Below, piece by piece: positions 3,068 to 45,562 of a DNA stretch of 64,000 nt. Numbering within the stretch: the stretch's first letter is position 1; every line of letters begins with the position of its first letter. The translations under genes and the position numbers were made by a program. Under the pieces are notes generated by a model. That model ran no database searches, was not told where the DNA came from, and saw nothing but the letters and a program-made list of their open reading frames with translations. The stretch is from Macrostomum hystrix. Lineage: Eukaryota > Animalia > Platyhelminthes. The stretch covers positions 7,006,001 to 7,070,000 of the forward strand of contig CATNEN010000034.1 in the NCBI GenBank assembly GCA_950097015.1. Reading direction: 5' to 3'.

Positions 3068-6000
3068 TACTTAAATGTGATGAAGGGTCGACTGAATGAC
3101 CTGCCACCAATGAACAGTCGCGTTGTGCGCATCTTCCTTTCGTCGACCTTCTCTGACATGGGAACTGAGCGCAACTACCTCATGCAACACGTCAACCCGA
3201 AGTTGAAGAAGTTCTGTCGTGACTCTTTCGGACTGGAGTTCCAGACCATCGACATGCGATGGGGAGTCGGTGACGATGTGCAGCTCGACCACCAAGGTCC
3301 GTACATGTGCTACCAGGAGATTGACAACTCACTGATCATGTCGGCGGGACCCTACTTCATCTGCCTGCTAGGTCAGCGCTATGGAAACCAGCCACCGGCA
3401 GCCCTCGTTGAAGCTGATGTTTTCGAGAAGATCATCGAGGCACTGAAACAAGATGGGCGCGACGTCTCATGTCTGCACGAGTGGTACACGCTTGACGAGA
3501 ACAACCAGCCGCCAATCTACGTCTTGAAGCCCATTGCAACTCTCTCTGAGGCGGTGAGTGTGACGCTTAGGCCAAATGTGCAGATTCACTCATCTGATAT
3601 AATGCCGAATTTCACATTTCTTTCCAGGCAAACAAGGAGCTTCTGAAGGCGGCTCGACAGCGCTGGGCAGCTGCTCACGACAAAATCATCAGCCTGATGA
3701 AGAGAGGCGCTGAGTTGTGTCTTCAGAGGACTCTAATATCGCACACGACTATGAAGAAGTTCGTGGCGTCGGTCACTGAGATGGAGGTCATCAACGGAAT
3801 CCTGTCAAAGCCCCCACAAAAGCTAGCTCAGGCTCTTGCGTTTGTGAGAGAGTTTACTGACATTGAATCTCAGCGGGACTTCTCGCGCGGGAAACTCTTC
3901 AAATTCATCGACCTGACAGAATCCGTCAACGAGAAAGGTGAAGCTGTCAAGGTGCTCGATGAGGCAGTGAACATGATGGTCAAAGAATTAAACAAGCATG
4001 TTTTAGGACGCATGTCGAAATCGAATTCTTTCCGCTACTCCCTGAAGTGGACCAACAATTCAGAGGGTGTCGGCATGGAGACTCACAGAGACTATCTCGA
4101 GAAATTCAGCAGAGACTACTGCGAAAATGTGATGCGTCTCGTTGCTGAATCCGTGCGAGAGAGCATGCGCCTTCGAGCCGATGATCTTTACTCAGAGGTG
4201 TTACAGCACTCCACTGCATGCGTCAACTACGTGAAGAAGTTTCAAGGTCGGCAGGAGATCATCGACAAGGTGAAGGCTTACGTGCAAGCGAGCAACACCA
4301 CTGAGCCTCTGGTGGTGCATGGCGACTCTGGCAGTGGCAAGACCTCTCTTCTGGGCAAGGCCGCCAGTCTTGTGCGAAGCTGGCTGCCAGAGTCCGATGC
4401 ACCAGAAGCGATTGTGCTGCTGCGGTTCCTCGGCACCAGTCCTGGTACGTCGAGCATTCGACAGACTCTCAAGTACTTGTGCCGTCAGCTGGCCCTGTTT
4501 GGCAATGATGACGACAAGGAAAAGTGCGAGTCACTCGACGACTTCAAAGAGATCTTGAACACCTTCTACTCAATGCTGGATCGCATTGGCCAGTTCAGGC
4601 GAATCTTGGTGTTCCTTGACAGTGTGGATCAACTGGACAGCTCAGATGGTGCCTACCACCTGACGTGGGTGCGGACACCTCTTCCTGACAATGTGAAGAT
4701 GATTGTGTCCACTCTGCCAAACATGTTCGACCTGCTGAAGACATTTAAAGGGAAGCTTCCCAACCCGAACATCTACGTCGAGGTGACTCCGTTGGAGACG
4801 AGTCTGTGCACGAGCATTTTGTCAGCTCTGCTCAGCGAGCAAGGCCGCACGCTGAATCGACAACAATGGGCTCTGATTGAGCAGGCCTTCTCAAAGTGCT
4901 CGCTCCCAATCTACGTGCACCTGTTGTACCACGAGGTTCTGAGATGGCGCTCGTATCAGCAGGTGGACGAGTCCTGCTTGCGCTACACCGTTCGCCAGGC
5001 CATCTTTCAGTTGTTCGAGAACCTCGAGCTCAAGCACGGCAAATTGTTTGTAAGTGTATTTTTTTGTTTTCTTTTGTATTGGAAAACTTGGCAGTTGCTC
5101 AAAATCTAAATTGCTCTCGTTTTGCATCGCAGACCTCGCACGCTCTGGCATTCATCACTGCCTCGAGAAACGGACTGTCGGAATCGGAGTTGGAGGACTT
5201 GCTCAGTCTGGATGACACTGTGCTCATCGATGTGTTCCAGCATCACCTGCCGCCCTTCATCCGCATTCCACCGATCTGCTGGGCTCGACTGCGACACGAC
5301 ATTGGATCATATCTAGTGGAGAGGGAGGCAGACAATATCCGGGTGGTGTTCTGGTATCACCGACAGTTCATCGAGGTCGCTCAGGAGTACTTCTTGTCTG
5401 ATGAGAATACCAGGCGCGACATTCACTCAATCATGGCAGACTACTTCCTGGGACTGTGGAGTGGCCGCAAGAAGAAGTTTGTGTATCCAGCCTATCTAAG
5501 AAAGAAGCTTGTGAGTGGACAGCAGTCGAGTACTGCTTCGATGTGAAACGCTTTTATGTGTAGCTCTTGGTACTGACGTATGGCCGTGTTGAAATAATGT
5601 GAGCCCTTGATCCTGACGTGCAATTTCAGAATCTTCCCGAATACTCGATGGAGGACCGAGCTGTTCCGGAACAACCATTCGTGCTCCGCAAAGATGAAGA
5701 CGGCACCGCACAGTACAACTTGCGCAAACTGAACGAGCTGCCTTGGCATCTCATCAAGTCTGAGCGAGTGAACGAGTTCTACGACTACATCGTGTTCGAC
5801 TACGACTTCATGTTCAACAAGCTGAAGGGCACCTCGCGCTACCTGCTACTGAGGGACCTTGACCTTCCTCAGAAGCTCGGAGTTGAGTGCATCTCCGAGG
5901 CAGAGCTCGTGTACAATGCGATCAGGCTCTCTGCACAGAGCCTCGTGTACGACCCTTCAAACTTGAGCATCGATCTCATTGGCCGGCTCATCATGTACGA

Positions 6001-6721
6001 GAAGGACTGTCCCCGAGTGAAGCTGCTGCTCAACCAGTGCAGACAATCGAAGCAAGCGCTAAGCAACTGCTGCCTCATTCCCAAAGTCCAGTGCTTTGAC
6101 TCCGGCTCGGGAGTGCTCTACTCCAGCTTCGATCTGGGCCTGGGAATGGGACTTGTCATGCCCAATGGTCAGTTGGTGTCGTTCTCGCTCATCAGCAATG
6201 AGGTCACTTGGTACGACATTGAGGGAAACGAAATCAAGCGGTTCAGCTCCGATTACAACTTGTTCCTCAGTATGAAGTACATGTCGACTGGGTACATCCC
6301 AGACGACTGTGTGGTGCACGTGCTTTCCATGCGCTCAAAGAACGCCGGTGTCAATGAGGACGACATGCGTATGATTCTAATCGACATGGGGAAGAAGATG
6401 GTTATGGATGAGATCGAAGAATACGAGGCCTGCAACAAGGAGGTGTCTCAAGAGCTGCAAGGCATGATGGACGCTCTCAATGCCGGAGAGATTCCTGACA
6501 GCCTCATGGATAAATTGGGCGTCGACGACAATATGAAGAAGAAGCTGGCTGGCGAAGAAGGCCAGAAGTCGCACGATCTCGTTCGAGTCGACTTCATGAA
6601 CGGCCGAGTGACAAAGCTGATGTCGTTGGACCCATCTTGGGGTGTCACTTCGGATGATGTCGAATACGTGACAAAGGACTATGTGCTGTGCTGCAAGGGA
6701 AAAAGTGACTCGACAGGAACG
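3068..6721 (+). repeat. Inverted repeat block A, left arm (pairs with 26711-30354)
   Basis: Near-identical (about 99% by eye) to the reverse complement of 26711-30354, including three introns. The 10-nt length difference comes from indels in introns 2 and 3. Confidence 0.95.
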
Positions 6722-9700
6722 AGTGCTCTTAAACTTTTGTCACTCGAAGAGAAGAAGCTTGTAAGTATTTTAAAAGACGAAACAAGCGGGGTTTCAAGAA
6801 TCGGAACGCAGTGTCTAGATAGTCAGAGAAATCTATTGTGCTTCGGACTTGAGCACGTTAAAAACTTTACTATGCTTGTCTTCATGAACTTGGAAACCAA
6901 GGATATGTTAAGAAGCTCTATGAGTGACGCAATCAAATCTGCTGACAAAGCTGATCTTGAGACCAAGTGGCACTTTTCTCCGATTAGACAGAATGACAAG
7001 AAGAAAGACGCTGACACCTCTGCCGACTCAGAATCAGAGGTTAATGAGTCTGACGTCAGATCACTGGCAGTCGATATTCTCCTGAACGCAGATTCAATCA
7101 TCGTATCCGCTTGCCTCATCGATCATGATGGTAACGTCGTTTCTATTGTGACGGCAACAAGAGCTGCTTTGAACGGTGGCGAAGACCAGTCAAGATCATT
7201 CCTTATCACTTTTTCTACCGCTGACAACTTGAGGCCCGTATGCATCGTAGATTTAGGGGACTATATTGATGTGAAGTACAGCCAAAACTTTGTCAGTCCA
7301 AGTCGGCGTCGAATGACGTTTCTTATGAAGAGACGTTCGAGAACGTACGGCTACTCGGATTCACAAGTTCGTGGGCTTGTGTACAATTGCGACGAGAAGC
7401 GTGCCGTTGCACTGACCGTCTCGGATGATAAGGACAGGAAGTTCAAAAATGCAGTTTCGAACTTCGGAGACGGAACCCAGGCCAAGTTTACAGAAGACGA
7501 ACGTCTTTTGGTGACTTCTGGCGCTAAAGTTATGATTTTGGTTTGGTCAGTGCAAACAGGCGAGCTCATCGAAGGAATCGCGCTGGGAACAGCTGAAAGC
7601 TTCCTTTGCGGCCAACCGAAAGGAACCGACTTCTTCACAATATGCCACTTTCCTGACGAATCCGCAGGTGACACAGAAGAACGAATGTATATAATGACTA
7701 AGGTGTACAATTTGAAGCACTTCACAGACAAACTGAAGAGCAGCGAGGCGGAAGCATTGCTTCCGTTGTTTACGCAAACCAAACCGTGTCTCTGTGCATC
7801 TGGACTGGTGGACCAAAATGTGACTGAGATTCGCACAAAAGAGACTACTATCTCTTTGGACACCCGAGCACTACAGGCTACAGTCTACTCTAAGAAGGAT
7901 CAAAAAGTTTTAGAGAAACCAACCGAGAAAATCGTGCTGTCGGATCATCCTCGCATTGAATTGCGTCGTAAGCCAAACGACGCATTGGAAGTGGACATTG
8001 TAGTTCAAAGTACTAAGTTATTCGAAAAAGTATTTGAAGTCCGATCAAAGGATGATCTTAAAGACCTCCGCTCGAAGAAAATTCAAGGTCAAGAGTTCTA
8101 TCCGGTTAAGGAAAAAGAGCTCGACAATCAAGACGAGATGGAACTGGTCACCTTATTGTCCATTTCTAAGAGCGTCATTTTCACACAGTCTCCCATCTCG
8201 CAGGGCAGCAACCCATTCCAATTAGGATTTTTAGATGAACGCAGGAAAATTCTTATCGTGCTGAGGTGCTACACCCAGCACTCCATAAAATCTAGCACTG
8301 CTTCGTTCATCTCGTTGCCACTGATGGAAGGCACGTCTATTAATTTTTCGAAGATGGAAAGTCACATTTCCGTCGCGGCAGAACCCCACGACAGACTGTC
8401 AGCAAATTTTATTGAACTTTTCGGTGATATAATCTACGCAGGAAAAGAGGCAGTCGCAAAGAAAAAAGCTGAGAGGCTTCAAGAGTCAGCAGAAACGGAA
8501 GGTAAAGAAGATTCTTCAGGCACTCAAAAGAATGAGCCTGAAGAGTTGTCCGAGGAAGCAAAAAGAGAAAAGATCGGGAAGTTCTTGACTGAACGGCTGA
8601 CTAAGCGTAATGAACTCGTTGATCTCCAGTTCGTGCCTGAGAAGTGCACTCTTAACTTGGCATTCAGCCAGCAACTCAAGGCATCGGAGGAGATTCGGCT
8701 CGGTGTCGGAGTTCCTCCGATTTGGCTTGGCGCGGTGGTTCGCCTGGACTACAGCGACGTTGAGACTGGCACGCCGATCACCGAGCTGCAGATACAACAC
8801 TCTGTCGGAAAAGTTTTCGACATGGGTCCCGCAGTGGCCTTCCTCAACGACAACCAGCACCTCGTCAACTACAAGCTGCAGATTGTGGACTACATGAAAG
8901 GAGAAGTGATTCGCAGTCTCAGTCCGGGTGAGGATGTGTACTTTGTGCGCCTGCAGGTCACTCCCGACTGCAGCCTGCTGGTGGGCCAGGTGTACTTTCC
9001 CGCCTACGAAGTGGAGTTCGCAGTGTTTGACGATGACACTGCCAAAAACTCTGAGTTGTTCGCCGTGGTTCCACCTCGAGGCCTTCAGGTAAGAAAAAAT
9101 ATGCAAAATGATAATTTTTGCTGTTTGGTACCGTTTCAGTCATGCAGCCATGCAGCAATACATTCGAATGCACTGTTAAATATTTCTCATTGCAAATGCG
9201 TCCAGGTCTTTTGTGTATCTGACGGCCGTCGTGTCGCCAACTACCTGTTCGAGTCGGATCCGTTCGGCATGTGCCTAGTCGGAGACGGCGGACGCGACCT
9301 TCTGGTGCTCACGCACAACGCACCAATCATGTTATTCTCGCTGCACGATCCTCCGCCGCCCGAAGCTGTTGCCAATAATCAATCGTTGAAGGCGATTGAG
9401 GTCGCGAGGACCGAGGATATATCGATGGCAGCTGCTGGATCCCCGAAAAAGGCTCCTGGCCCTAGGCCTGAGTATCTGGAGATGCTGAGTGAGCTCCTGA
9501 ATAATAATAATAATTAATATTTGCACGGAGGACTGTGGGCCATGAAACTTCATTTGGTGACACTAGACCCGTAACCAGCGAGGATGCAATTCGGCCCATT
9601 TCGCTGACTTTTGAGCACACACGCAGATTCCGTACGCAGGCACACGCTCACACCGGTGTGTACATCTGCGAAAGGCAAACGCGTTAAACGCTCGGTCACT

Positions 9701-9959
9701 CACCCCCGCTCCTTGGCTTTTATGGTTTCCAGTATCAAAATTTAGAAGGCTTTTGCTTCGCGAATGAAGCCGTTTCGAATGACGCCGTTTTGGGACATTA
9801 TAGGGTTCTTTAAGTAATTGCTAATCTGATTCAAATATTCTAGGCCCAGTCCTGGCTAAAGCCATGGCCGAAGTGGCCAATGCGAGACCGTCGGACCCTA
9901 TAGGGTTCCTGGCCCAGTGTCTGCTGCGAATCCAGGCCGACTGCGACACAACACAGTGA
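3080..9959 (+). CDS. NWD1/NWD2-like NACHT (STAND) NTPase, copy 1, with C-terminal Dpy-30 motif; about 2040 aa from the first ATG
   Basis: Exons 3080-3553 (frame open back to an acceptor at 2902), 3628-5049, 5133-5510, 5630-9088, 9206-9488, 9844-9959; all introns are GT-AG and frame-consistent. Motifs: [25 protein letters not shown] (DUF4062-like), Walker A GDSGSGKT, Walker [48 protein letters not shown]. The true start could lie upstream. Confidence 0.9.
8618..9088 (+). repeat. Inverted repeat block B, left arm (pairs with 24426-24896)
   Basis: 471 bp with only scattered substitutions versus the reverse complement of 24426-24896; it ends exactly at the splice donor. Confidence 0.95.
9500..9708 (-). 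mobile_element. tRNA-derived SINE (family B), internally deleted, inside the last intron of NWD copy 1
   Basis: The reverse complement has the head gggggtgagtgaccgagcgtttaacgcgtttgcc and the tail ctagtgtcaccaaatga...ctccgtgcaa(att)n, matching 31780-32124. Confidence 0.8.
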
Positions 9960-11233: not shown

Positions 11234-11541
11234 TGTAGCAGAGGTTGTAGCCTAGTGGTTAGGGCGTCGGACTCACGACTTGAAGGTCGGGGGTTCGATT
11301 CCTGACTCCACTGGAACAATTTGTGTCATTTAGCAAGACACTTAACTCTGCATTGCTTCAGTTCACCCAGCTGTTAAATGGGTACCAGCATCAGCTGGGA
11401 TAATTGAAGGTGGGTGTGGCGTCCCCCCAGTCCGTGGACTGAACAGCTGTACGCAGCCTTCAGATGCGCCGCGCATAAGCTGCGGCTGTGCTGTCGGCTG
11501 CACATCTGACCCAATTCGGGGCAGGTGTAATCAATTAAAAA
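11234..11541 (+). mobile_element. Full-length tRNA-derived CORE-type SINE (family A)
   Basis: A box (tagcctagtgg) and B box (ggttcgattcc); body tgtgtcatttagcaagacacttaac...cagctgttaaatggg resembles the MIR/CORE domain; 11-bp TSD ttaagtctatg at 11223-11233 and 11542-11552. Confidence 0.85.
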
Positions 11542-12325: not shown

Positions 12326-13671
12326 TCAACCTCTTTGAAGAGGGTAGCACAGGCGGTCGCACTCATCCAACGCCTCCATCATGTCGTTTTCGGTGATGCC
12401 CTCCTCCTGGAACAGGTGAAAGAAGGCTCGCCCATTGGCGAACAGCTTCCGCACCTGAGCAGTATTCTGCTCAAAGAGACTGGCCGAAGAGCTCGAGTTG
12501 ATAAAGAAGACGGCCGACACGGTCTCGCCGCGCGGCGGAATGTCGCAGACGCCAACCGAGAAGGCGTGCGTCAGCCAGGCTGGGAAGGAGGCTTCGCGAC
12601 GAGTCCGCAGGTCTACAAGGGCGGAGTCTAGCGCCTGTATCGGGATGCGGCCCCGGTAAATTCCGGCGGCGGAGAAGACGCGGCCACTCGCGAGATCGCA
12701 GGAGGCCATTTGAATATCCGAGCTGAACATGCGGGTTGACAGTTCGCGAACTGAGCCGCCGTGTTTGGAGCCCCAGACTACTGAAGGCAGCAGGAAGTGC
12801 AGCCTGCGGGTTGAATGTAGTTTTCAACAAATTAGACCAGCGTATTAACCCTTGAATGTCGCCTGTCAGTTCGAGCTTCTATCTAGGCGACCTAGCTGAT
12901 AAATTCTTACCTGGGCAAAGGCACCAGAGCATTGACCAATTTTCCCGGACTCAGATTCAACTGTCCGGGAAATCGAATGCACGCGGTTAGTCCGAGCATC
13001 ATCATCGCAGCTGATCGATTCACATCCTCAATGTCTGGTCTCGTCCCCCCGTTAGTGGCCTTAATGCCGGCGGCAATGTCCCAGCAGTAGGTTAGCTCAG
13101 CTTTATCAGCTATGTGAGGGGTGCACAGAACCGCATTGTAGGCCTCGATACTAGCAGACTGTGTTGGGAACAAGCTGAAGGTGTGCACGGGAATGCCGGA
13201 CAGTCCCTTCTGAAGTAGGTGGCTGGTCAGGCCTGAGCCAGTGCCTCCTCCCAGGCTGTGGACAATGTGAATCGCTCCGACGCGGTCGCTGAGTTCTAGC
13301 TGACGTTGGAGAGTGTTTAGAATCGACTCGGTCATTGTGTGGGCTATGGATGAATTGAAGGCCCGGCCATAGGTGCTGGCTGCCTCTCCGGAGCCGTCTA
13401 TTAGGCTCTCCGGCTGGAACATGCCGCTGCACTGGCTGGCTGACAGGGCGGAAACCGCAGTCATGTCCAAATCTGCGAAGATTGCCCGCGGTGTGAACCG
13501 TCCAGATGGCGACTCGTTAAAGTTGACGCCAATTTTATCCAACTGGAGTTGACTGCAGCCGACGAAGCGGCCCTGGCAGTCCAGGCCGTGCTCGTCTGCC
13601 AGGCTCTCCCAGTAGTTGAGCCCAACACAGGAACCGCATTGGCCAATGTGGATGGTGATAATTTCATGCAT
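12326..13671 (-). CDS. Highly divergent beta-tubulin-like protein, 412 aa, 2 exons
   Basis: Exons 13671-12911 and 12803-12326 (GT-AG; 1239 nt). MHEIITIHIGQCG, PRAIFADLD, SLGGGTGSG, RFPGQLN..KL...PLPRLHF and VCDIPPRG all align to beta-tubulin. Confidence 0.9.
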
Positions 13672-14511
13672 TCTTGAGCTGCCAATGCCCTGCGTATGTT
13701 GCAAAGAATATTGCGTTTGTTAAATCACAGCGAGGCACTTGAATACTATTTGGAACACCGTATGGCGCTTCGGCACCAATGGCTTCTGAGCTTTAGCGCT
13801 CTTGGCCATAGACTAGGAGAAAAGTTTATTAGTTAATTAGTGTTCTATTTCAGCAAAGGAACGCATACATCTAAGGCTAAAAGGGCATATCTACTTTGGC
13901 CCGATTTCTTTTCAAACTTGTACCTGAAGCTAATATTCAGACCTATTCAGCTAATATCATTAATGAGATTAATAAATCAAAACACCGTTCAATCTTTTAT
14001 GTGCACATGTCACCAAATAAACCCAAACAGTTAACGACACCACAGCTATTTCCGGCGCTCAGAAAATATTCTGCATCGACGGCTACAGCTGCAGGTGTAG
14101 CTCAGCTCTGAATAATGCTAGCTTTGGACAGTATTGTTGTCCCTAGGTCCTTTCTTCTCTCTTTCCTTTACCACCATAGCAAGGCAAGAGGTCTAGCGCT
14201 AATGCAGGTATCCAAGGCCTCCTGAGTGCAAAGGGAATTTTATACCGCTTGCCACTATAACTGAGCGCTGCCAGTGAGTTCATTCAGCCTATTGTCAAGG
14301 GGTCATAGGCTGCTCATTCGTTGCTGCTCTGTTGGTACAATGAGAGCCGCAAAATTCAGCAGAGCAGCTTCTAGAAAAAAGAGAGAAATATTCTGCGGCG
14401 TGGCCGAGGTGGAAAAGCTCCACTCAAACCAAACTCAAAACCAAACAAATTTATTAGACAGAAGCAGACTCGCGACTCAAAAATACTCCGCTCCCCGGCT
14501 GGATTTTTCTC

Positions 14512-18510
<3,999 letters not shown>

Positions 18511-18979: not shown

Positions 18980-19678
18980 GATCTCTCTCAGTCACTCACT
19001 GATCACTCCGATCTCTCTCAGTCACTCACTGATCACTCCGATCTCTCTCAGTCACTCACTGATCACTCCGATCTCTCTCAGTCACTCACTGATCACTCCG
19101 ATCTCTCTCAGTCACTCACTGATCACTCCGATCTCTCTCAGTCCCTCACTGATCACTCCGATCTCTCTCAGTCACTCATTGACCACTCCGATCTCTCTCA
19201 GTCACTCACTGATCACTCCGATCTCTCTCAGTCACTCACTGATCACTCCGATCTCTCTCAGTCACTCACTGATCACTCCGATCTCTCTCAGTCACTCACT
19301 GATCACTCCGATCTCTCTCAGTCACTCATTGACCACTCCGATCTCTCTCAGTCACTCATTGACCACTCCGATCTCTCTCAGTCACTCACTGATCACTCCG
19401 ATCTCTCTCAGTCACTCACTGATCACTCCGATCTCTCTCAGTCACTCACTGATCACTCCGATCTCTCTCAGTCACTCACTGATCACTCCGATCTCTCTCA
19501 GTCACTCACTGATCACTCCGATCTCTCTCAGTCACTCACTGATCACTCCGATCTCTCTCAGTCACTCACTGATCACTCCGATCTCTCTCAGTCACTCACT
19601 GATCACTCCGATCTCTCTCAGTCACTCACTGATCACTCCGATCTCTCTCAGTCACTCACTGATCACTCCGATCTCTCT
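18980..19678. repeat. 30-bp minisatellite (gatctctctcagtcactcactgatcactcc), about 23 copies
   Basis: Direct tandem units, a few with the ttgaccact variant. It explains the 315-aa repeat ORF. Confidence 0.97.
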
Positions 19679-21923: not shown

Positions 21924-22515
21924 CTGGCTGGGTGCACCAACCACACAGCTAAACAGATGTGGGTAGTTTGAGTGCAGCTGCACTGGCGCTGGCCGGTCAC
22001 GTGTAGTCTGGCTGGGTGCACCAACCACACAGCTAAACAGATGTGGGTAGTTTGAGTGCAGCTGCACTGGCACTGGCCGGTCACGTGTAGTCTGGCTGGG
22101 TGCACCAACCACACAGCTAAACAGATGCAGGGAGTTTGAGTGCAGCTGCACTAGCGCTGGTCGGTCACGTGTAGTCTGGCTGGGTGCACCAACCACACAG
22201 CTAAACAGATGTGGGGAGTTTGAGTGCAGCTGCACTGGCGCTGGCCGGTCACGTGTAGTCTGGCTGGGTGCACCAACCACACAGCTAAACAGATGTGGGT
22301 AGTTTGAGTGCAGCTGCACTGGCGCTGGCCGGTCACGTGTAGTCTGGCTGGGTGCACCAACCACACAGCTAAACAGATGTGGGGAGTTTGAGTGCAGCTG
22401 CACTGGCGCTGGCCGGTCACGTGTAGTCTGGCTGGGTGCACCAACCACACAGCTAAACAGATGTGGGGAGTTTGAGTGCAGCTGCACTGGCGCTGGCCGG
22501 TCACGTATAGTCTGG
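21924..22515. repeat. 84-bp tandem repeat, 7 full units, in a ~1 kb GC-rich island (about 21790-22830)
   Basis: Units start every 84 bp (22008, 22092, 22176 ...) with only point variants; the island ends in (GTAA)n. Confidence 0.95.
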
Positions 22516-23559
22516 CTGCCACACAGCTCCCCCCAGCACTGAGCTAGGCCCCCGAACGTCGTCGGGTGCTCGGCGAGCCAACGATGATGACGAGGAGCGG
22601 TCCCCGAAGGTAGCTGGAGCTGGCGCTGAAGGCCGCGGGAGCGGGCGCTGAAGGCAGAAGGGGCGGGCGCCGTAGGCAGCAGGTGCTGGCGCTGAATGCA
22701 GCAAGGGGCACCGAGCGGATGCCATAAGTACATTCGGCACGGCGCCGAAACTGAAGAGTTGGAATGGCAGCTGGGTCGGCAGGCGGGCGCCGAGAGGCAG
22801 CAGGTGCAAGCGCCGAAGTAAGTAAGTAAGTACGTATTAATTATCTATTGAAAGTCCAAAGTATTATCTAATGACTCCTTTAAAACCCCTTTAATGTACA
22901 GGTAGTACATTCAAACTTTATCCAGCAGGCTGGGGTGGCAATACGAGCTCGTATTAGCTCACCATTGAAGCGCCGATGTCACCAATGTACCGCATAAAAC
23001 TGCCAGATGGAAAAATAGCTTATTGACCTTGACAGCCAGAGGACAGATTGTAAACAAATCGGCTGCATCGTTGACAAGCCGCGCAGAGACCGGAAGACCG
23101 GACAAATCAGTTAAGATTTAAACAAGCAAAGCTTGGCTCCACTATATGCACAAGTAAACTTTAACCCTAAGTATTGGCCATCTTTCTGATAGTCTGCTGC
23201 TGCTGCTGTGTGTGTGTTTGCTCAGCAATCATCGCGTGGTCCTCTAGCACCGAAAATGTTTTTGCCAATTATTGGACAGCCAGTTTGCTTGGTCTAAAGG
23301 GCAAGCATGCTTCTATACGAGTGCGAATATAGCAGTCAAAATAAGTGTTCACTCCGCCTTTAACTACTAATAGTAGAATATAAAAATATAAATGTGTACA
23401 TGAAATCCTAAATTTAGAATTTTGTAATCTATCTATAGTTGGCTGGCTTCTGGCAGAAGATAAAACCAACTAACTTGTGTTTATGTACTAACTGGTCATT
23501 ATAAAATCAGGAATTGAAAAACTGTGGTTGCAAAAATATTACATCGATATTATACTAGG

Positions 23560-23830
23560 AGTTGTAGTTTAATGATTACGGCATCGGACTCATGAATTGA
23601 TGGTCGGGCGTTCGATTTCCCGAATTCACTGAAACAATGTGTGTCATCTAACAAGCACAATTAAATCTGCATTGCTTCAGTTCACCCAGCTGTACCATCC
23701 TTCATTCGCTTGGGGAATATGTGGGCGTGGCGTCCCCCAGTCCATGGACTGAACAGCAACACTGCAGCCTTCAGATAAGCCGCGCAATAGCTGCGGCTGT
23801 GCTGTCCCAATCGGGGCAGGTGTAATCAAT
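23560..23830 (+). mobile_element. CORE-type SINE family A, degenerate copy
   Basis: gcatcggactcatga...gttcgatt...gcttcagttcacccagctg...cagtccatggactgaacag...ggggcaggtgtaatc. Confidence 0.8.
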
Positions 23831-24089
23831 TTTCACTATTATCAGTATAAAAGGTCTTACTAAGCGAGGTAGCTATGGGAACTAGCAATACCTAACTATA
23901 GGAATCGTGAACTTTGATACTTTCGTGCGAATCAAGCTTGAGTAGCATCATGCCAGCTTTACTCATAACTTAGTTCGTACAAATTTTAACTAAATATACA
24001 TGTATAAAACGTCAGCGCCTTTCTTTGTAGAAAAAATTTTTTTTGTGAAATAATAAATAAATCGTTTGAGCTACTAAATTGTCAAAGAG

Positions 24090-27000
24090 TCACAGACAAG
24101 AGCAGCATCGCGGAGACTTGGTCTCAGCAGCTTCATCAACAGTCGAGACGCAGGATTCAGAGGACACAGATTTACAATTGGATCCCTTCTCAGATGGGGA
24201 TTCGAGAAGTGAGAACAGCATGACGGGCGCATTGTGGGTGAGCACAAGCAGGTCCCGACCGGCCTCTCCGATCAGACAAAAACCGACCGGGTCCGACTCA
24301 AATAGATAGTTTGCTAAACGGCGACCATCAACCATTCGGTACACCTGCGCGGCATCAGGAGAAGTATCAGAAATGAGGATAAAATAAAACAAAAGCGTAC
24401 TGAGAGCACTAGGCAAGCTTCTCACCTGCAAGCCTCGAGGTGGAAGCACGGCGAACAACTCAGAGTTTTTCGCAGTGTCATCGTCAAACACCGCGAACTC
24501 CACTTCGTAGGCGGGAAAGTACACCTGGCCCACCAGCAGGCTGCAGTCGGGAGTGACCTGCAGACGCACAAAGTACACATCCTCACCCGGACTGAGACTG
24601 CGAATCACTTCTCCTTTCATGTAGTCCACAATCTGCAGCTTGTAGTTGACGAGGTGCTGGTTGTCGTTGAGGAAGGCCACTGCGGGACCCATGTCGAAAA
24701 CTTTTCCGACAGAGTGTTGTATCTGCAGCTCGGTGATCGGCGTGCCAGTCTCAACGTCGCTGTAGTCAAGGCGAACCACCGCGCCAAGCCAAATCGGAGG
24801 AACTCCGACACCGAGCCGAATCTCCTCCGATGCCTTGAGTTGTTGGCTGAATGCCAAGTTAAGAGTGCACTTCTCAGGCACGAACTGGAGATCAACAAGA
24901 TCCATACGCTTGGACATCTTCTTTTTCATGAATTCAACTACCATGTTTTCGCGTTCAGGATCTTCCATCTCATTGTTGTTCGCTACACTCACTCTAGCCC
25001 TGTCAACTTGGTCCTGCGCCTCAGGCAGCGGAGCGCTGAATATGAAGCGACTGAAAGACTCGAGAAAATTCTTAGATAAGTGTATATCTGGTGAGTCGGA
25101 ATTTACCGTAAACTGGTTCTGTAAATCCGACAGACGGTACTTGCATCCGTTTAGAGTGCTCAGACACTGGATAGATAGGTAGCTAAGCCAAATTTTGGTA
25201 AAGTCCAGATTGAGAAGAATAAGCAGCTTCTTTGATTCATCCATAAGTGAGATCTCTAAAGGAGACTGCTCAGCAAAAACAGGCGATTGAATGAATTTAG
25301 CATTCAGCATATTTATCTGTATCGTTACCTGAACAGAGCTTTGGGGTTCAGAATTTCTGTCAGTAGTCTCTTCGTCAACAACTATAAACTCCGCACCGAA
25401 TTGTTTAAGAATGGCCTTTGCATTTTGAGAACCCAGCTGATTAGCACTGCTACTACGAATATACGCAACCAGATTGGGATCGTGCAGGACTATTGTCGTG
25501 ACATCACGCTGCCCTACTCGACAACGAACTTCGACTAGCGGCTTAGCAGCTAATACATGTGTCTCTTCGTCCCATCCTGACGATGCACTGCTTAAAGATG
25601 CCAACATTGTAATGGTGTTGAGACTAATGGTCTCACTCCCAATAATATCTACTTCGCCTTTTTTCGCGAGCGAAACAGCACAGCGCGCCAGTTTCCTTTG
25701 TTTAAAATTAGGTAGCAGGGCGGAGTCTTCTCTACCTGAAGAGTCGAAGAACGATTTCAGATTGTAGACCTTAGCCATGATGTACATTCGCTCATCTGTG
25801 TCACCAGCTGACTCGTCGGGAAAGTGGCAGATTGTAAAGAAATCAGTGCCCATTGGCTGACCTGCCAGAAAGCTCTCCGCCGACCCCAGTCGAATTCCTT
25901 TCAGAAGCTCACCGGTCTCAACTGACCACACGAGCAGCAAAACTTTTGTTCCCGATGTGAGAAGAAGCCGTTCATCTTCTGTGAACTTTGCTTGCGTTCC
26001 ATCTCCAAATGCGGACATGGCGGACTGAAACTCGCTATTTTCTGATCTTATCCGTAAAGGAATTGCTCTGTGCCTATCGGCATCAAATATGACACCTCGG
26101 ATAGCCTCCTTTTGACTCGCACCCACTCTTCTTAGTTTCAGAAAGTAGGCTAATCTCTTCCTCGAGCGGCTAGCGAAGTTCTGCGAAAATTTCACGTCTA
26201 GTGCTGCATCTACATCAACGATCGAGCGAAGCTTCATAGCCCCGGAGGTTGACAGCAGCAGAAAATAAGTTTTCGACTCACTTTCATCGCTCCCTGCCAC
26301 TGTACCTGTGAAGGTTACCATTGCGACAATATCTCTCTCATGGTTGATTAGGCATGCATTAGCAGTAATGATTGTGGCCGATAAAATAAAATTAATGGAA
26401 TTAGTTTTATGTGACAATACCTTGGCCTTACCGGACCTTGTCCATGGGTCTACAGTGCCACTTCGCGTTTAGATCAGCGCTACTAAAGGACTGAAATATT
26501 TCCGAAAGAAAGGCTTTTAAAAATGTCCCCTTTTGAAGGTTAATAAACGTTAAAAGTGTAGAACTTTTCTCTGTTAGCTCCAGACCAAAGCAAAGCAAAA
26601 GATTCTTGCAATCCAGGATTTTGAGTACCGATTTTGGAGGTTCCGCTAGTTTCTTCACCAAATAATGTAATCAACTTTCTGTCTTTAAGTGACAGAAGAT
26701 TAAGAGTGCACGTTCCTGTCGAGTCACTTTTTCCCTTGCAGCACAGCACATAGTCCTTTGTCACGTATTCGACATCATCTGAAGTGACACCCCAAGATGG
26801 GTCCAACGACATCAGCTTTGTCACTCGGCCGTTCATGAAGTCGACTCGAACGAGATCGTGTGACTTCTGGCCTTCTTCGCCAGCCAGCTTCTTCTTCATA
26901 TTGTCGTCGACGCCCAATTTATCCATGAGGCTGTCAGGAATCTCTCCGGCATTGAGAGCGTCCATCATGCCTTGCAGCTCTTGAGGCACCTCCTTGTTGC

Positions 27001-30000
27001 AGGCCTCGTATTCTTCGATCTCATCCATAACCATCTTCTTCCCCATGTCGATTAGAATCATACGCATGTCGTCCTCATTGACACCGGCGTTCTTTGAGCG
27101 CATGGAAAGCACGTGCACCACACAGTCGTCTGGGATGTACCCAGTCGACATGTACTTCATACTGAGGAACAAGTTGTAATCGGAGCTGAACCGCTTGATT
27201 TCGTTTCCCTCAATGTCGTACCAAGTGACCTCATTGCTGATGAGCGAGAACGACACCAACTGACCATTGGGCATGACAAGTCCCATTCCCAGGCCCAGAT
27301 CGAAGCTGGAGTAGAGCACTCCCGAGCCAGAGTCAAAGCACTGGACTTTGGGAATGAGGCAGCAGTTGCTGAGCGCTTGCTTCGATTGTCTGCACTGGTT
27401 GAGCAGCAGCTTCACTCGGGGACAGTCCTTCTCGTACATGATGAGCCGGCCAATGAGATCGACGCTCAAGTTTGAACGGTCGTACACGAGGCTCTGTGCA
27501 GAGAGCCTGATCGCATTGTACACGAGCTCTGCCTCGGAGATGCACTCAACTCCGAGCTTCTGAGGAAGGTCAAGGTCCCTCAGTAGCAGGTAGCGCGAGG
27601 TGCCCTTCAGCTTGTTGAACATGAAGTCGTAGTCGAACACGATGTAGTCGTAGAACTCGTTCACTCGCTCAGACTTGATGAGATGCCAAGGCAGCTCGTT
27701 CAGTTTGCGCAAGTTGTACTGTGCGGTGCCGTCTTCATCTTTGCGGAGCACGAATGGTTGTTCCGGAACAGCTCGGTCCTCCATCGAGTACTCGGGAAGA
27801 TTCTGAAATTGCACGTCAGGATCAAGGGCTCACATTATTTCAACACGGCCATACGTCAGTACCAACATAAAAGAGTTTCACATCGAAGCAGTACTCGACT
27901 GCTGTCATCTCACAAGCTTCTTTCTTAGATAGGCTGGATACACAAACTTCTTCTTGCGGCCACTCCACAGTCCCAGGAAGTAGTCTGCCATGATTGAGTG
28001 AATGTCGCGCCTGGTATTCTCATCAGACAAGAAGTACTCCTGAGCGACCTCGATGAACTGTCGGTGATACCAGAACACCACCCGGATATTGTCTGCCTCC
28101 CTCTCCACTAGATATGATCCAATATCGTGTCGCAGTCGAGCCCAGCAGATCGGTGGAATGCGGATGAAGGGCGGCAGGTGATGCTGGAACACATCGATGA
28201 GCACAGTGTCATCCAGACTGAGCAAGTCCTCCAACTCCGATTCCGACAGTCCGTTTCTCGAGGCAGTGATGAATGCCAGAGCGTGCGAGGTCTGCGATGC
28301 AAAACGAGAGCAATTTAGATTTTGAGCAACTGCCAAGTTTTCCAATACAAAAGAAAACTAAAATACACCTACAAACAATTTGCCGTGCTTGAGCTCGAGG
28401 TTCTCGAACAACTGAAAGATGGCCTGGCGAACAGTGTAGCGCAAGCAGGACTCGTCCACCTGCTGATACGAGCGCCATCTCAGAACCTCGTGGTACAACA
28501 GGTGCACGTAGATTGGGAGCGAGCACTTTGGAAAGGCCTGCTCAATCAGAGCCCACTGTTGTCGATTCAGCGTGCGGCCTTGTTCGCTGAGCAGAGCTGA
28601 CAAAATGCTCGTGCACAGACTCGTCTCCAACGGAGTCACCTCGACGTAGATGTTCGGGTTGGGAAGCTTCCCTTTAAATGTCTTCAGCAGGTCGAACATG
28701 TTTGGCAGAGTGGACACAATCATCTTCACATTGTCAGGAAGAGGTGTCCGCACCCACGTCAGGTGGTAGGCACCATCTGAGCTGTCCAGTTGATCCACAC
28801 TGTCAAGGAACACCAAGATTCGCCTGAACTGGCCAATGCGATCCAGCATTGAGTAGAAGGTGTTCAAGATCTCTTTGAAGTCGTCGAGTGACTCGCACTT
28901 TTCCTTGTCGTCATCATTGCCAAACAGGGCCAGCTGACGGCACAAGTACTTGAGAGTCTGTCGAATGCTCGACGTGCCAGGACTGGTGCCGAGGAACCGC
29001 AGCAGCACGATCGCTTCTGGTGCATCGGGCTCTGGCAGCCAGCTTCGCACAAGACTGGCGGCCTTGCCCAGAAGAGAGGTCTTGCCACTGCCAGAGTCGC
29101 CATGCACCACCAGAGGCTCAGTGGTGTTGCTCGCTTGCACGTAAGCCTTCACCTTGTCGATGATCTCCTGCCGACCTTGAAACTTCTTCACGTAGTTGAC
29201 GCATGCAGTGGAGTGCTGTAACACCTCTGAGTAAAGATCATCGGCTCGAAGGCGCATGCTCTCTCGCACGGATTCAGCAACGAGACGCATCACATTTTCG
29301 CAGTAGTCTCTGCTGAATTTGTCGAGATAGTCTCTGTGAGTCTCCATGCCGACACCCTCTGAATTGTTGGTCCACTTCAGGGAGTAGCGGAAAGAATTCG
29401 ATTTCGACATGCGTCCTAAAACATGCTTGTTTAATTCTTTGACCATCATGTTCACTGCCTCATCGAGCACCTTGACAGCTTCACCTTTCTCGTTGACGGA
29501 TTCTGTCAGGTCGATGAATTTGAAGAGTTTCCCGCGCGAGAAGTCCCGCTGAGATTCAATGTCAGTAAACTCTCTCACAAACGCAAGAGCCTGAGCTAGC
29601 TTTTGTGGGGGCTTTGACAGGATTCCGTTGATGACCTCCATCTCAGTGACCGACGCCACGAACTTCTTCATAGTCGTGTGCGATATTAGAGTCCTCTGAA
29701 GACACAACTCAGCGCCTCTCTTCATCAGGCTGATGATTTTGTCGTGAGCAGCTGCCCAGCGCTGTCGAGCCGCCTTCAGAAGCTCCTTGTTTGCCTGGAA
29801 AGAAATGTGAAATTCGGCATTATATCAGATGAGTGAATCTGCACATTTGGCCTAAGCGTCACACTCACCGCCTCAGAGAGAGTTGCAATGGGCTTCAAGA
29901 CGTAGATTGGCGGCTGGTTGTTCTCGTCAAGCGTGTACCACTCGTGCAGACATGAGACGTCGCGCCCATCTTGTTTCAGTGCCTCGATGATCTTCTCGAA

Positions 30001-30342
30001 AACATCAGCTTCAACGAGGGCTGCCGGTGGCTGGTTTCCATAGCGCTGACCTAGCAGGCAGATGAAGTAGGGTCCCGCCGACATGATCAGTGAGTTGTCA
30101 ATCTCCTGGTAGCACATGTACGGACCTTGGTGGTCGAGCTGCACATCGTCACCGACTCCCCATCGCATGTCGATGGTCTGGAACTCCAGTCCGAAAGAGT
30201 CACGACAGAACTTCTTCAACTTCGGGTTGACGTGTTGCATGAGGTAGTTGCGCTCAGTTCCCATGTCAGAGAAGGTCGACGAAAGGAAGATGCGCACAAC
30301 GCGACTGTTCATTGGTGGCAGGTCATTCAGTCGACCCTTCAT
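24090..30342 (-). CDS. NWD1/NWD2-like NACHT NTPase, copy 2 (two apparent +1 frameshifts; pseudogene or assembly error)
   Basis: Exons 30342-29869 (frame open back to an acceptor at ~30535), 29794-28373, 28291-27914, 27802-24426, 24344-24090, with the same intron positions as copy 1. The long exon is 3377 nt (2 mod 3), with shifts at ~26620 and ~26436. No Dpy-30 exon was found. Confidence 0.85.
24426..24896 (-). repeat. Inverted repeat block B, right arm
   Basis: Reverse complement of 8618-9088. Confidence 0.95.
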
Positions 30343-30354
30343 CACATTTAAATA
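26711..30354 (-). repeat. Inverted repeat block A, right arm
   Basis: Reverse complement of 3068-6721. Confidence 0.95.
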
Positions 30355-45550: not shown

Positions 45551-45562
45551 GCAGGCAGAGGT

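What the first reader, a model, noticed from the sequence alone, without database searches (positions are those of the whole stretch)
3068..30354. Inverted pair of NACHT receptor-like genes with sharply bounded homogenised and hypervariable blocks
Seen: the two NWD-like genes face each other. Block A (3068-6721 vs 30354-26711) is about 99% identical by eye, introns included, and block B (8618-9088 vs 24896-24426) is nearly so. The sequence upstream of the ATG, the ~1.9 kb between A and B, the following intron and the next exon are strongly diverged, with that exon conserved in protein but changed at most third positions. The switch is abrupt (GACAGGAACG|agtgct vs GACAGGAACG|tgcact). Inference: an old duplication whose NTPase module is kept identical by recurrent gene conversion while a central C-terminal segment diverges. 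Established parallel: STAND/NLR sensors such as fungal NWD/HNWD genes keep the NACHT core and diversify the sensor domain. This would be a candidate non-self-recognition locus in an animal.
Basis: partly seen in the sequence, partly recalled or inferred. Interest (0 to 1): 0.82.

Follow-up and report, generated by a model that had tools for sequence, protein, structure and literature searches.

The report
Gene conversion mosaic in flatworm NACHT genes
Two tail-to-tail copies of a flatworm NWD1-like NACHT switch-protein gene duplicated long ago, yet patches of them have recently been copied over one another, so their ATPase half and one small C-terminal block are near-identical while the propeller region between stays anciently different; this is a clean, read-verified case of a pattern already known from other receptor gene families.

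Summary
Block A (3068-6744 vs 30354-26688) is 98.9% identical over 3,677 nt, with three introns inside it. Block B (8603-9095 vs 24911-24419) is 97.4% identical. The 1.9 kb between them, the upstream DNA, intron 4 and exon 5 are saturated at silent sites. Contigs from independent DNA and RNA runs bridge the junctions, and their depth runs 1:2:3, so this is not an assembly chimera.

The genes are NWD1-type STAND NTPases of a Macrostomum flatworm: DUF4062 (TIR-like NADase domain), NACHT, NWD1 winged helix, then a WD40-like propeller region. M. lignano has an orthologue of copy 1's variable segment (dN 0.36, against 0.62 to copy 2). Blocks A and B are far closer within this genome (dS 0-0.07) than between species (0.5-1.1). 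That means an old duplication followed by later interlocus gene conversion.

A third paralog 785 kb away carries a separate 1.9-kb tract. Two other paralog groups (C41 trio, C1 pair) show the same two modules homogenised.

The scan had already found this pattern on other DNA of this genome (s1-286126). The zebrafish NLR-B30.2 family is a published precedent.

"Hypervariable" and "non-self recognition" are not supported: overall dN/dS is below 1 and the samples hardly differ. Copy 2's two frameshifts are absent from read contigs.

The parts
3080..9959 (+). Copy 1 (c1) gene. Exons: 3080-3554, 3629-5049, 5133-5510, 5630-9088, 9206-9488, 9844-9959 (stop at 9957-9959); 2,043 codons. Encodes DUF4062, NACHT, WHD_NWD1, helical arm, WD40-like propellers and a Dpy-30 tail.
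   Evidence: Introns 1-3 come from spliced RNA contigs laid on the identical copy 2 and transferred by alignment. The frame is open across the junctions, and the junction peptides match M. lignano proteins. The exon 5 start comes from the c1 transcript's loose end. Intron 5 (9489-9843, GT..AG, in frame) is inferred only. Pfam domains.
24090..30342 (-). Copy 2 (c2) gene. Exons: 30342-29868, 29793-28373, 28291-27914, 27802-24426, 24344-24090 (stop at 24092-24090). About 1,967 codons once the two letters missing from the reads are left out. No Dpy-30 exon was found.
   Evidence: GT..AG joints at 29794-29867, 28292-28372, 27803-27913 and 24345-24425 appear in RNA contigs of X2, X4 and X9. Exon 4 is open (1,125 codons, no stops) in the read version. 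An X2 transcript contig covers 24031-24341 without a break, so the stop lies in the mature RNA.
3068..6744 (+). Block A, copy 1 arm. It runs from 12 nt before the ATG, through exons 1-3, introns 1-3 and the first 364 codons of exon 4.
   Evidence: 98.9% identical to 30354-26688. dS between c1 and c2 is 0.000-0.033.
26688..30354 (-). Block A, copy 2 arm.
   Evidence: Contig depth in the DNA run is 150-228, against 74 in the single-copy variable part.
6745..8602 (+). Variable segment of copy 1: exon 4 codons ~365-996, inside the WD40-like propeller region, with a better conserved core at 7430-7730.
   Evidence: About 40% amino-acid identity to c2 and 56% to M. lignano. 4-fold sites differ at 73% (c1-c2). 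No near-identical copy elsewhere in the genome.
24912..26687 (-). Variable segment of copy 2.
   Evidence: One 1,872-nt contig (24867-26740) in both X1 (DNA) and X2 (RNA) bridges both junctions. No close copy elsewhere.
8603..9095 (+). Block B, copy 1 arm: the last 158 codons of exon 4 plus 7 nt of the intron 4 donor.
   Evidence: 97.4% identical to 24911-24419. dS is 0.066.
24419..24911 (-). Block B, copy 2 arm.
   Evidence: depth 158, against 74 in the variable part.
4258..6147 (+). Tract shared with the third paralog c3 (G000:C34:6221699-6223699, 785 kb upstream, same strand). It runs from just before the NACHT P-loop, through introns 2-3, to codon 172 of exon 4.
   Evidence: 98.5% (c1) and 97.5% (c2) over 2,001 nt, with flanks at 58-80%. 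c1 equals c3 at every c1/c2 difference from 4446 to 5566, both intron indels included. Contig depth is about three copies across exactly this span.
26454..26616 (-). Two single letters of the assembly (26454 and 26616) that shift copy 2's frame.
   Evidence: 'Left out 1' at both places in all contig depth of X1 and X2. Leaving them out opens exon 4.

Best explanation
c1 and c2 are convergent paralogs of an NWD1-type STAND NTPase gene in a Macrostomum flatworm. They duplicated before this species split from M. lignano. Since then, non-reciprocal copying between the loci (interlocus gene conversion) has repeatedly overwritten two parts of the genes. The first part is the DUF4062-NACHT-winged-helix-arm half, together with the three short introns inside it. 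The second is a 0.5-kb piece encoding the last propeller blades of exon 4. The tracts stop where the two copies are no longer alike enough to pair: at the unrelated upstream DNA, at the unalignable intron 4, and at the fast-evolving central propeller segment. That central segment therefore keeps its ancient divergence. The same process links c1 to c3, 785 kb away, and acts on the same two modules in two other paralog groups of the family. Shown here: the mosaic, its reality in reads, the age order, and several tracts of different ages. Inferred: the gating of tracts by sequence likeness, and the direction c1 to c3. By architecture the proteins should work like APAF-1/NWD-type switches: a propeller sensor releases NACHT oligomerisation, which brings together an N-terminal TIR-like NADase-family domain. 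That part is inference from family membership only.
For: The mosaic and its sharp limits are, with the permutation test. Introns 1-3 lie inside block A and are near-identical, and the only indels fall in introns, so protein-level selection cannot explain the identity. c1-c2 dS is 0-0.066 in the blocks, against 0.64-1.7 for c1-M. lignano (0.52-1.14 at 4-fold sites). In the variable part dN is 0.36 for c1-M. lignano, against 0.62 for c1-c2 and c2-M. lignano. Four-taxon ML trees group c1 with c2 in exon 1, the first part of exon 2, the 3' part of A and block B (UFBoot 86/100/69/97), but group c1 with M. lignano in the variable part (UFBoot 71). M. lignano P0001-3 match c1's variable part at 67-72%, against 39-50% for c2 and 43-47% for c3. 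The M. lignano locus is syntenic, with tubulin downstream. There are several events. The stretch 3071-4392 has a single difference, 4446-5566 has 13 substitutions and 2 indels that are mostly derived in c2, and block B is the oldest. The mosaic is real in reads: one contig spans the whole c2 variable part plus 45 and 53 nt of the blocks in two runs, c1 transcripts leave the c2 line exactly at 24911, 26688 and 24424, and contig depth is 74/150-168/228. No donor for either variable part exists elsewhere in the genome. The pattern is family-wide. Block A also covers a stretch that evolves fast between species (6350-6600, 7-16 of 20 residues conserved) yet is identical between c1 and c2. The precedent is zebrafish NLR-B30.2, where the NACHT is homogenised within groups while other parts escape (10.1101/027151).
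Against: No c2 or c3 orthologue was found in another species: the search was blank under a length filter, and the M. lignano contig ends before the c2 position. The age of the split therefore rests on distances and on a 71% bootstrap. The read evidence comes from short-read contigs that break at repeats, not from long reads, and X1 may be the sample that was assembled. The assembly has local errors (2 indels and 3-5 substitutions in 1,872 nt), so some of the roughly 1% difference inside the blocks may be noise. Silent-site divergence between c1 and M. lignano is higher in the variable part (4-fold d 1.65) than in the blocks (0.5-0.8), and the simple model does not predict this. That block B is homogenised in three separate groups, although it is not especially conserved across the family (29-33% amino-acid identity between groups), hints at something beyond likeness-gated copying.
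Confidence: 0.85

Rival explanations
1. Conversion occurs as described, but the central propeller segment stays different because selection favours distinct sensor specificities. Converted variants are purged, in the manner of the Teshima-Innan escape-from-conversion model. The pair would then be part of an innate immune or non-self receptor repertoire.
For: The architecture is effector-like head, NACHT and propeller, with the catalytic-glutamate motif of DUF4062/NIR NADases conserved (preprints). The variable part evolves 4-10 times faster at replacement sites than the rest, even between orthologues. The same modules escape in three paralog groups. The protein-conserved core at 7430-7730 has not been homogenised.
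Against: dN/dS in the variable part is about 0.2 with its own 4-fold dS, and about 0.45-0.6 with the blocks' dS, so it is below 1. Only 3-5 differences in 1,872 nt separate the samples from the assembly. There are three close copies and roughly a dozen distant ones, which is not a large expansion. The 2026 preprints found human NWD1, NWD2 and NPHP3 inactive as NADases in vitro and Drosophila Nwd1's domain non-toxic in bacteria. The zebrafish paper notes that NWD1 has no reported immune role.
Confidence: 0.25
2. Homogenisation of the NACHT-arm module and block B is itself favoured. Either the paralogs of a group co-assemble into mixed oligomers, or the last blades dock on the NACHT module for auto-inhibition. 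In either case both surfaces must stay matched within a group.
For: The same two separate modules are homogenised in three independent groups, with nearly the same limits: exon 2 aa ~206-211 to exon 4 aa ~172-187, and exon 4 aa ~990-1120. Block B is not highly conserved between groups. The zebrafish authors proposed group-specific multimerisation. In APAF-1 the propellers fold back on the NOD (Discussion).
Against: No structural or interaction test was possible. Block B is modelled at pLDDT below 50. Between orthologues block B is as constrained as block A (dN 0.085), while its neighbours are a fast segment and an intron, so likeness-gated copying also predicts its survival.
Confidence: 0.15
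3. The pair is a recent whole-gene duplicate in which the middle 1.9 kb of one copy was replaced by a cassette from a more distant family member.
For: Mosaics of this kind can arise that way, and the family has at least a dozen members.
Against: Neither variable part has a close match anywhere else in the 220-Mb assembly; the best other matches are 34-49% identical at the amino-acid level. The upstream DNA, intron 4, exon 5 and the 3' ends are also anciently diverged. c1's variable part is orthologous to M. lignano's.
Confidence: 0.04
4. The identical blocks are an assembly artefact, such as a collapsed or chimeric join of haplotypes or repeats.
For: The assembly does carry small errors here, and some family members on small contigs look like duplicated haplotigs, with identical scores for C13/C31 and for C10/C41.
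Against: Contigs of separate runs, including RNA from a 2020 study, reproduce both copies' junctions. Depth steps 1:2:3 at the block limits. Both alleles of several c1/c2 differences are seen. An unrelated tubulin gene and 14 kb of unique DNA lie between the copies.
Confidence: 0.02

Closest known systems
Zebrafish NLR-B30.2 family (Howe et al., bioRxiv 10.1101/027151)
   Same: The NACHT-encoding part is kept near-identical within paralog groups by gene conversion. Other parts of the same genes escape. The evidence is low silent divergence within a species alongside an older split seen in a related species.
   Different: That family has hundreds of genes, LRR/B30.2 sensors, and documented positive selection in B30.2. 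Here the groups are small (2-3 genes), the sensors are WD40-like propellers, a second small homogenised block sits beyond the variable part, and no positive selection is shown.
Vertebrate NWD1/NWD2, TEP1 and NPHP3 (DUF4062-NACHT STAND proteins)
   Same: DUF4062 head, NACHT and NWD1-type winged helix all score above Pfam thresholds. The C-terminal half is propeller-like. The TEP1 catalytic-glutamate motif SVTEMEV is identical.
   Different: The gene is single-copy in vertebrates. The flatworm genes form paralog groups, have propellers too divergent for Pfam WD40 models, and mostly end in a Dpy-30 motif (c2 does not).
Fungal NWD/HNWD (het-d/het-e type) NACHT-WD genes
   Same: NACHT plus a WD-type sensor, with concerted evolution in the family.
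   Different: In fungi the highly similar WD repeats themselves are shuffled and homogenised, and they carry the hypervariable sites. Here no internal repeats exist, and it is the NACHT half that is homogenised while the propeller stays diverged.
Arm-to-arm conversion in large inverted repeats (for example primate Y-chromosome palindromes) and escape from conversion (Teshima and Innan 2004; Innan 2009)
   Same: Inverted paralogous arms are kept about 99% identical by intrachromosomal conversion, and a sub-region that has diverged stays outside the tracts.
   Different: The arms are only 3.7 and 0.5 kb and are separated by a 14-kb spacer carrying genes. Conversion also reaches a direct-orientation copy 785 kb away. 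This comparison rests on my own knowledge and was not read here.

Membership tests
NWD1/NWD2-type STAND NTPase | N-terminal DUF4062 domain | tested here: met
   PF13271 scores 38.9-39.0 bits (cut-off 24.7) in exon 1 of both copies. HMMER hit to the TEP1 domain crystal chain 11gz_A, E 1.2e-9.
NWD1/NWD2-type STAND NTPase | NACHT NTPase with P-loop | tested here: met
   PF05729 scores 39.4 and 37.8 bits (cut-off 26.7). The Walker A motif GDSGSGKT is in exon 2.
NWD1/NWD2-type STAND NTPase | NWD1-type winged helix after the NACHT | tested here: met
   PF25469 scores 33.9 bits (cut-off 27) in exon 3. The same family is recorded for the M. lignano and trematode homologues.
NWD1/NWD2-type STAND NTPase | C-terminal WD40 propellers | tested here: inconclusive
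   No Pfam WD40 hit even at E of 1. The AF2 model (pLDDT 58) shows runs of 4-strand blades at pLDDT 70-90, and Foldseek finds tandem WD40 proteins (Gemin5, Utp21, APAF-1) at E 1e-9 to 1e-7, but TM-scores are low.
DUF4062/NIR TIR-like NADase | Conserved catalytic glutamate (TEP1 E1008 position) | tested here: met
   TEP1 chain 'RSVTEMEV' aligns to the identical SVTEMEV of the M. lignano orthologue (the second stretch is weak at 4.6 bits). The motif is present in c1, c2 and c3. The second Glu is invariant in the flatworm relatives aligned across it; a sixth, P0019, is misaligned there.
DUF4062/NIR TIR-like NADase | TIR-like fold | tested here: inconclusive
   The model of P0003:25-300 has a beta-alpha-beta-alpha-beta core, but at pLDDT of only 47-60. 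No PDB match reaches E below 0.001.
DUF4062/NIR TIR-like NADase | NAD+ hydrolysis | not testable with these tools
   Human NWD1 and NWD2 were inactive in vitro, and only TEP1 was active.
Interlocus gene conversion between paralogs | Sharply bounded near-identical tracts that include non-coding DNA, in otherwise diverged copies | tested here: met
   Introns 1-3 lie inside the tract.
Interlocus gene conversion between paralogs | Tree conflict between segments when an orthologue from another species is added | tested here: met
   c1 groups with c2 in the blocks and with M. lignano in the variable part (UFBoot 71 there).
Interlocus gene conversion between paralogs | Both copies and their junctions exist in the organism's DNA | tested here: met
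   (short-read contigs and depth). Long reads were not available.
Fungal HNWD-type allorecognition genes | Tandem, highly similar WD repeats with repeat-level concerted evolution | tested here: not met
   Tandem Repeats Finder finds no array in 3068-9959 or 24090-30354.
Fungal HNWD-type allorecognition genes | Extreme allelic polymorphism of the sensor | tested here: not met
   The c2 variable part shows 3-5 substitutions in 1,872 nt between the assembly and two runs. Few samples, possibly inbred lines.
Dpy-30-tailed flatworm NACHT proteins | Terminal Dpy-30 motif | tested here: met
   c1 at 9834-9956 scores 40 bits for PF05186 (cut-off 22). c3, the C1 pair and the C41 trio also have it. c2 does not: no hit in the window, and its stop lies in the mature transcript.

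The most novel reading that the evidence does not exclude
The family may evolve by module-specific concerted evolution that is selected rather than incidental. In each of three paralog groups the NACHT-winged-helix-arm module and the last propeller blades are kept matched, while the central propeller (and in some groups the NADase-like head) is kept distinct. This would let group members co-assemble, or share one auto-inhibitory lock, while sensing different ligands. That would amount to a small combinatorial TIR-like-NADase receptor repertoire in a flatworm, a phylum with no described NLR system.
Probability: 0.15. Interest if true: 0.65.

Novelty: new member of a known kind. Interest (0 to 1): 0.42.

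Why it matters
This is a tidy, dated and read-verified example of partial gene conversion in an animal STAND/NLR-like family outside vertebrates. Tracts link copies 20 kb, 283 kb and 785 kb apart, and the same two modules are homogenised in three paralog groups. For annotators, trees built from the NACHT domain will badly underestimate the age of these paralogs, and copy 2's frameshifts belong to the assembly and not to the gene. For biology, the locus gives a concrete pair (same ATPase half, different propeller, different promoter, one without the Dpy-30 tail) for testing what the propeller of a DUF4062-NACHT protein senses. That is timely, because DUF4062 has just been reported as a NADase domain. 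The phenomenon itself is not new.

Tried and rejected
1. I looked for a c2-type orthologue in other species. The search for homologous proteins with c2's 664-aa piece was blank, but only proteins of 365-1,162 aa were eligible. The exhaustive HMMER search returned no separate c2 or c3 representative. P0003 is not on record for contig look-up. The M. lignano contig ends 6.4 kb after the c1 orthologue.

2. GC-biased conversion was considered as the cause of the GC3 step (0.62-0.75 in the blocks, 0.44-0.50 in the variable part). I rejected it as the main cause. The introns inside the blocks are as AT-rich (0.34-0.47) as intron 4 and the upstream DNA. M. lignano shows the same step. Codon-usage selection tied to protein constraint fits better.

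3. A structural test of the TIR-like fold was inconclusive because the model core is low-confidence.

4. Exon 2's N-terminal piece alone found nothing in the PDB sequences.

5. The continuation of the c2 transcript contig beyond 24031 was not found in the window.

6. A pseudogene reading of c2 was considered after and dropped.

7. Literature searches for Macrostomum or flatworm NACHT genes found nothing relevant.

Exons were searched one by one by reference, and whole-domain tests used database proteins. A local script joined c1 exons 1-4 only to count stops and print short stretches of the translation (its first 60 residues, three 20-residue junction peptides and the last 20); nothing was saved.
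Full report
OBSERVATION. Block A is 3068-6744 vs 30354-26688, 98.9% identical over 3,677 nt. Block B is 8603-9095 vs 24911-24419, 97.4% identical. The 1.9 kb between them scores 36-76% per window, and the DNA upstream of 3068 cannot be aligned. All 29 mismatches and both indels of block A are listed. The quoted switch after GACAGGAACG is there. When the 1,095 differences between 3068 and 9095 are shuffled, no shuffle gives a perfect run longer than 76 nt (observed 1,030) or a run with at most 31 differences longer than 349 nt (observed 3,500).

WHAT THE GENES ARE. Pfam finds DUF4062 in exon 1, NACHT in exon 2 and the NWD1-type winged helix in exon 3 of both copies, all above the curated cut-offs. 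It finds a Dpy-30 motif in c1's last exon. The closest database proteins are three Macrostomum lignano NACHT proteins, 66-72% identical over the large exon, followed by trematode homologues. The identities and the conserved downstream tubulin gene fit a Macrostomum species other than M. lignano; I did not determine which.

The 1,153-residue product of exon 4 has no Pfam domain. Remote homologues match only its first ~210 residues, a helical arm. An AlphaFold model built on 20 flatworm sequences (mean pLDDT 58) shows that arm followed by runs of four-strand blades at pLDDT 70-90 up to about residue 700. Foldseek's best matches are tandem WD40 proteins such as Gemin5, Utp21 and APAF-1, at E 1e-9 to 1e-7 with low TM-scores. 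The variable segment (exon 4 codons ~365-996) therefore lies inside a divergent propeller region.

GENE MODELS AND READ EVIDENCE. One run search and one read-laying run were allowed. I laid four runs on copy 2, 24000-29900. X2, X4 and X9 carry spliced contigs. These give GT..AG introns at 29794-29867, 28292-28372, 27803-27913 and 24345-24425. Transferred to copy 1, they give introns at 3555-3628, 5050-5132 and 5511-5629. With these limits c1 exons 1-4 read open, and the junction peptides match the M. lignano proteins. c1's intron 5 (9489-9843) is inferred from a canonical in-frame GT..AG that reproduces the orthologue's tail.

The read-laying run gave four results that matter.
- One 1,872-nt contig (24867-26740) in X1 (DNA-like) and in X2 (RNA) covers the whole c2 variable part plus 45 nt of block B and 53 nt of block A.
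- Contigs of X4 (a 2020 study) lie on block B and the start of block A, and run off into unlike sequence exactly at 24911, 26688 and 24424. That is the c1 transcript, and its loose end matches c1 exon 5 at 9209.
- X1 contig depth is about 74 in the variable part, 150-168 in blocks A and B, and 228 across 27285-29024. This fits one, two and three copies.
- Both frame shifts I had found in c2 are absent from the contigs: one letter is left out at 26454 and one at 26616, in all depth of X1 and X2. Without them c2 exon 4 is an open frame of 1,125 codons.

Both copies are therefore real and transcribed. c2's variable part has lower contig depth than the shared parts (15 vs 82-103 in X2, and a single 190-nt piece in X4). 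Copy 2 is probably intact.

AGE ORDER. Codon alignments anchored on c1 used the read-supported c2, the third paralog c3 and the M. lignano gene in L014. Between c1 and c2, dS is 0.000 in exon 1 and the first 206 codons of exon 2, 0.012-0.033 through the rest of block A, and 0.066 in block B. Between c1 and M. lignano, dS is 0.64-1.7 in the same segments (0.52-1.14 at 4-fold sites).

In the variable part 4-fold sites differ at 73% between c1 and c2. dN is 0.62 for c1-c2 and for c2-M. lignano, but 0.36 for c1-M. lignano. Four-taxon ML trees group c1 with c2 in exon 1, the first part of exon 2, the 3' part of block A and block B (UFBoot 86, 100, 69, 97). In the variable part they group c1 with M. 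lignano (UFBoot 71). The duplication therefore predates the species split, and the blocks were made alike long afterwards. Introns 1-3 lie inside block A, and so does a stretch that evolves fast between species (6350-6600). Constraint on the protein cannot explain the identity.

MORE THAN ONE EVENT AND MORE THAN ONE PARTNER. A whole-genome search found a third paralog, c3, 785 kb upstream on the same strand. It shares a 2,001-nt tract (window 4147-6147) at 98.5% with c1 and 97.5% with c2, while its flanks are 58-80% identical. From 4446 to 5566, c1 and c3 agree at every site where c1 and c2 differ, both intron indels included, and M. lignano mostly sides with c1 and c3. c3's flanks are foreign to both other copies, so c3 was most likely the acceptor and c1 the donor; this is an inference. 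Within block A, the stretch 3071-4392 holds one difference while 4446-5566 holds 13 substitutions and 2 indels, and block B is older still. Several tracts of different ages are the simplest reading. Neither variable part has a near copy elsewhere in the assembly, which argues against a cassette swap from another paralog.

THE PATTERN IS FAMILY-WIDE. The genome has about a dozen further, more distant family members. I fetched two other groups. The tandem trio on C41 shares a 1.8-1.9-kb block at 99.2-99.8% and a second block of 360-420 nt at 92-96%, with flanks at 75-87% or unalignable. The inverted pair on C1, 283 kb apart, shares two blocks at 98%, an arm at 76% and a 248-nt block at 89%.

Mapped with c1's exons, the C41 big block runs from exon 2 aa ~211 (the P-loop) to exon 4 aa ~170-187. 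Those are almost exactly the limits of the c1/c3 tract (exon 2 aa 206 to exon 4 aa 172). The small block in both groups maps to exon 4 aa ~990-1120, which is block B. The scan had already reported the homogenised NACHT core of a neighbouring trio (s1-286126). I reached the same result independently.

WHY THE EDGES ARE WHERE THEY ARE. Identity starts 12 nt before the ATG, where the upstream sequences become unrelated. It ends 7 nt into intron 4, which cannot be aligned. The internal edges coincide with a fall in between-species protein conservation and with a third-position GC step. That step is 0.62-0.75 in the blocks against 0.44-0.50 in the variable part, is also seen in M. lignano, has Fisher p of 1e-18 to 1e-24, and leaves GC at positions 1 and 2 unchanged. 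The introns inside the blocks are as AT-rich as unconverted DNA, so the GC3 step fits codon-usage selection tied to constraint better than biased conversion.

The simplest model is likeness-gated copying. Constrained exon stretches, and the short introns caught between them, stay similar enough to pair and keep being overwritten. The fast-evolving central propeller, the introns at the edges and the promoters drifted past that point and are now barriers. Selection for different sensors, or for matched oligomerisation or auto-inhibition surfaces, may add to this. Neither was tested.

HOW THE PROTEINS PROBABLY WORK (inference from family). Two 2026 preprints report DUF4062 as a TIR-like NADase domain with one essential glutamate. 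They find it active in bacterial defence systems and in human TEP1. They place it N-terminal to the NACHT in NWD1, NWD2 and TEP1, where APAF-1 has its CARD. The exon 1 product hits the TEP1 domain crystal chain (E 1.2e-9). In the M. lignano orthologue, TEP1's SVTEMEV stretch, which by the papers' numbering holds E1008, aligns to an identical heptapeptide. That heptapeptide is present in c1, c2 and c3, and its second Glu is invariant in the flatworm relatives aligned across it. A fold-level check was inconclusive. The same papers found human NWD1 and NWD2 inactive in vitro, so activity here is open. A propeller-released, NACHT-driven assembly of NADase-like heads is the working model, and nothing here tests it.

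WHAT IS NOT SUPPORTED. 'Hypervariable' and 'non-self recognition' are not supported, for five reasons.
- The variable part shows dN/dS well below 1 between orthologues.
- It has no internal repeat arrays.
- It shows almost no difference between samples.
- The family is modest in size.
- No immune role is reported for NWD1.

KNOWN PARALLELS AND VERDICT. Domain-limited homogenising conversion of the NACHT exon, with other parts escaping, is described for the zebrafish NLR-B30.2 family, with the same logic of low silent divergence within a species and an older split across species. This locus is a new, well-documented member of that kind in a flatworm NWD1-like family. The modest additions are the second homogenised block, the shared tract limits across three groups, and conversion over 0.3-0.8 Mb.

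PROCEDURE NOTES. The read-laying run used 5,901 letters. Exons and the pieces of c2 were searched separately by reference. No joined model went to any search or fold tool.

Noticed in passing
window 26454 and 26616 (also 24968, 25080, 25863, 26302, 26430): The assembly differs from read-derived contigs by two 1-nt extra letters, which break copy 2's frame, and by 3-5 substitutions in 1.9 kb. Local consensus errors or polymorphism of about 0.3% should be expected in this assembly.
   Followed up: yes
window 24090-24344 and 9844-9959: Copy 2 ends at a stop (24092-24090) that lies inside its mature transcript, and no Dpy-30 exon is detectable for it. c1, c3, the C1 pair, the C41 trio and the M. 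lignano orthologues all carry the Dpy-30 tail. The X2 transcript contig continues past 24031 into 111 nt that are not in the window.
   Followed up: partly
window 3080-9088, step at ~6720 and ~8640: Third-position GC drops from 0.62-0.75 to 0.44-0.50 exactly in the variable segment, in c1, c2 and the M. lignano orthologue. GC at positions 1 and 2 and intron GC do not change. Silent divergence to M. lignano is also higher there.
   Followed up: partly
G000:C41:2196501-2226000 (L018-L020) and G000:C1:26237001-26247000 / 26525501-26535500 (L016, L017): Two further paralog groups of the family show the same two-block mosaic. The C1 partners are inverted and 283 kb apart.
   Followed up: partly
window 12326-13704 (-): A tubulin gene (Tubulin GTPase and C-terminal domains) lies in the spacer between the two NACHT genes. 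The same neighbour follows the M. lignano orthologue (L014 18835-22088).
   Followed up: partly
window 15990-16174, 18976-19678, 21924-22518: The spacer holds a (GTCT)46 microsatellite, a 30-nt minisatellite of 23 copies at 98%, and an 84-nt minisatellite of 7 copies at 97%. The long ORFs over the two minisatellites are probably repeat artefacts.
   Followed up: no
window 11239-11533, 32173-32475, 23561-23806, 9500-9625, 31990-32115: Copies of a short dispersed repeat (80-91% identical) flank the gene pair on both sides and in the spacer.
   Followed up: no
window 41846-47122 (-): A GC-rich (about 60%) non-LTR retrotransposon has an intact 1,234-aa endonuclease / reverse transcriptase / RNase H ORF and an upstream 519-aa ORF. 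Observed only.
   Followed up: no
window 56141-57709 (+): An ORF encodes the N-terminal part of the signal recognition particle receptor alpha subunit (SRP-alpha_N, SRP54_N, start of the SRP54 GTPase).
   Followed up: no
window 3075-3082: Inside the 12 identical nucleotides before the start codon sits a minimal ATG-TGA upstream ORF that overlaps the main ATG (ATGTGATG). It is present in both copies.
   Followed up: no
G000: C13:58188 / C31:3474525 and C10:175250 / C41:490902: Pairs of distant family members on different contigs give identical scores and open-frame lengths. They may be duplicated haplotigs in the assembly.
   Followed up: no
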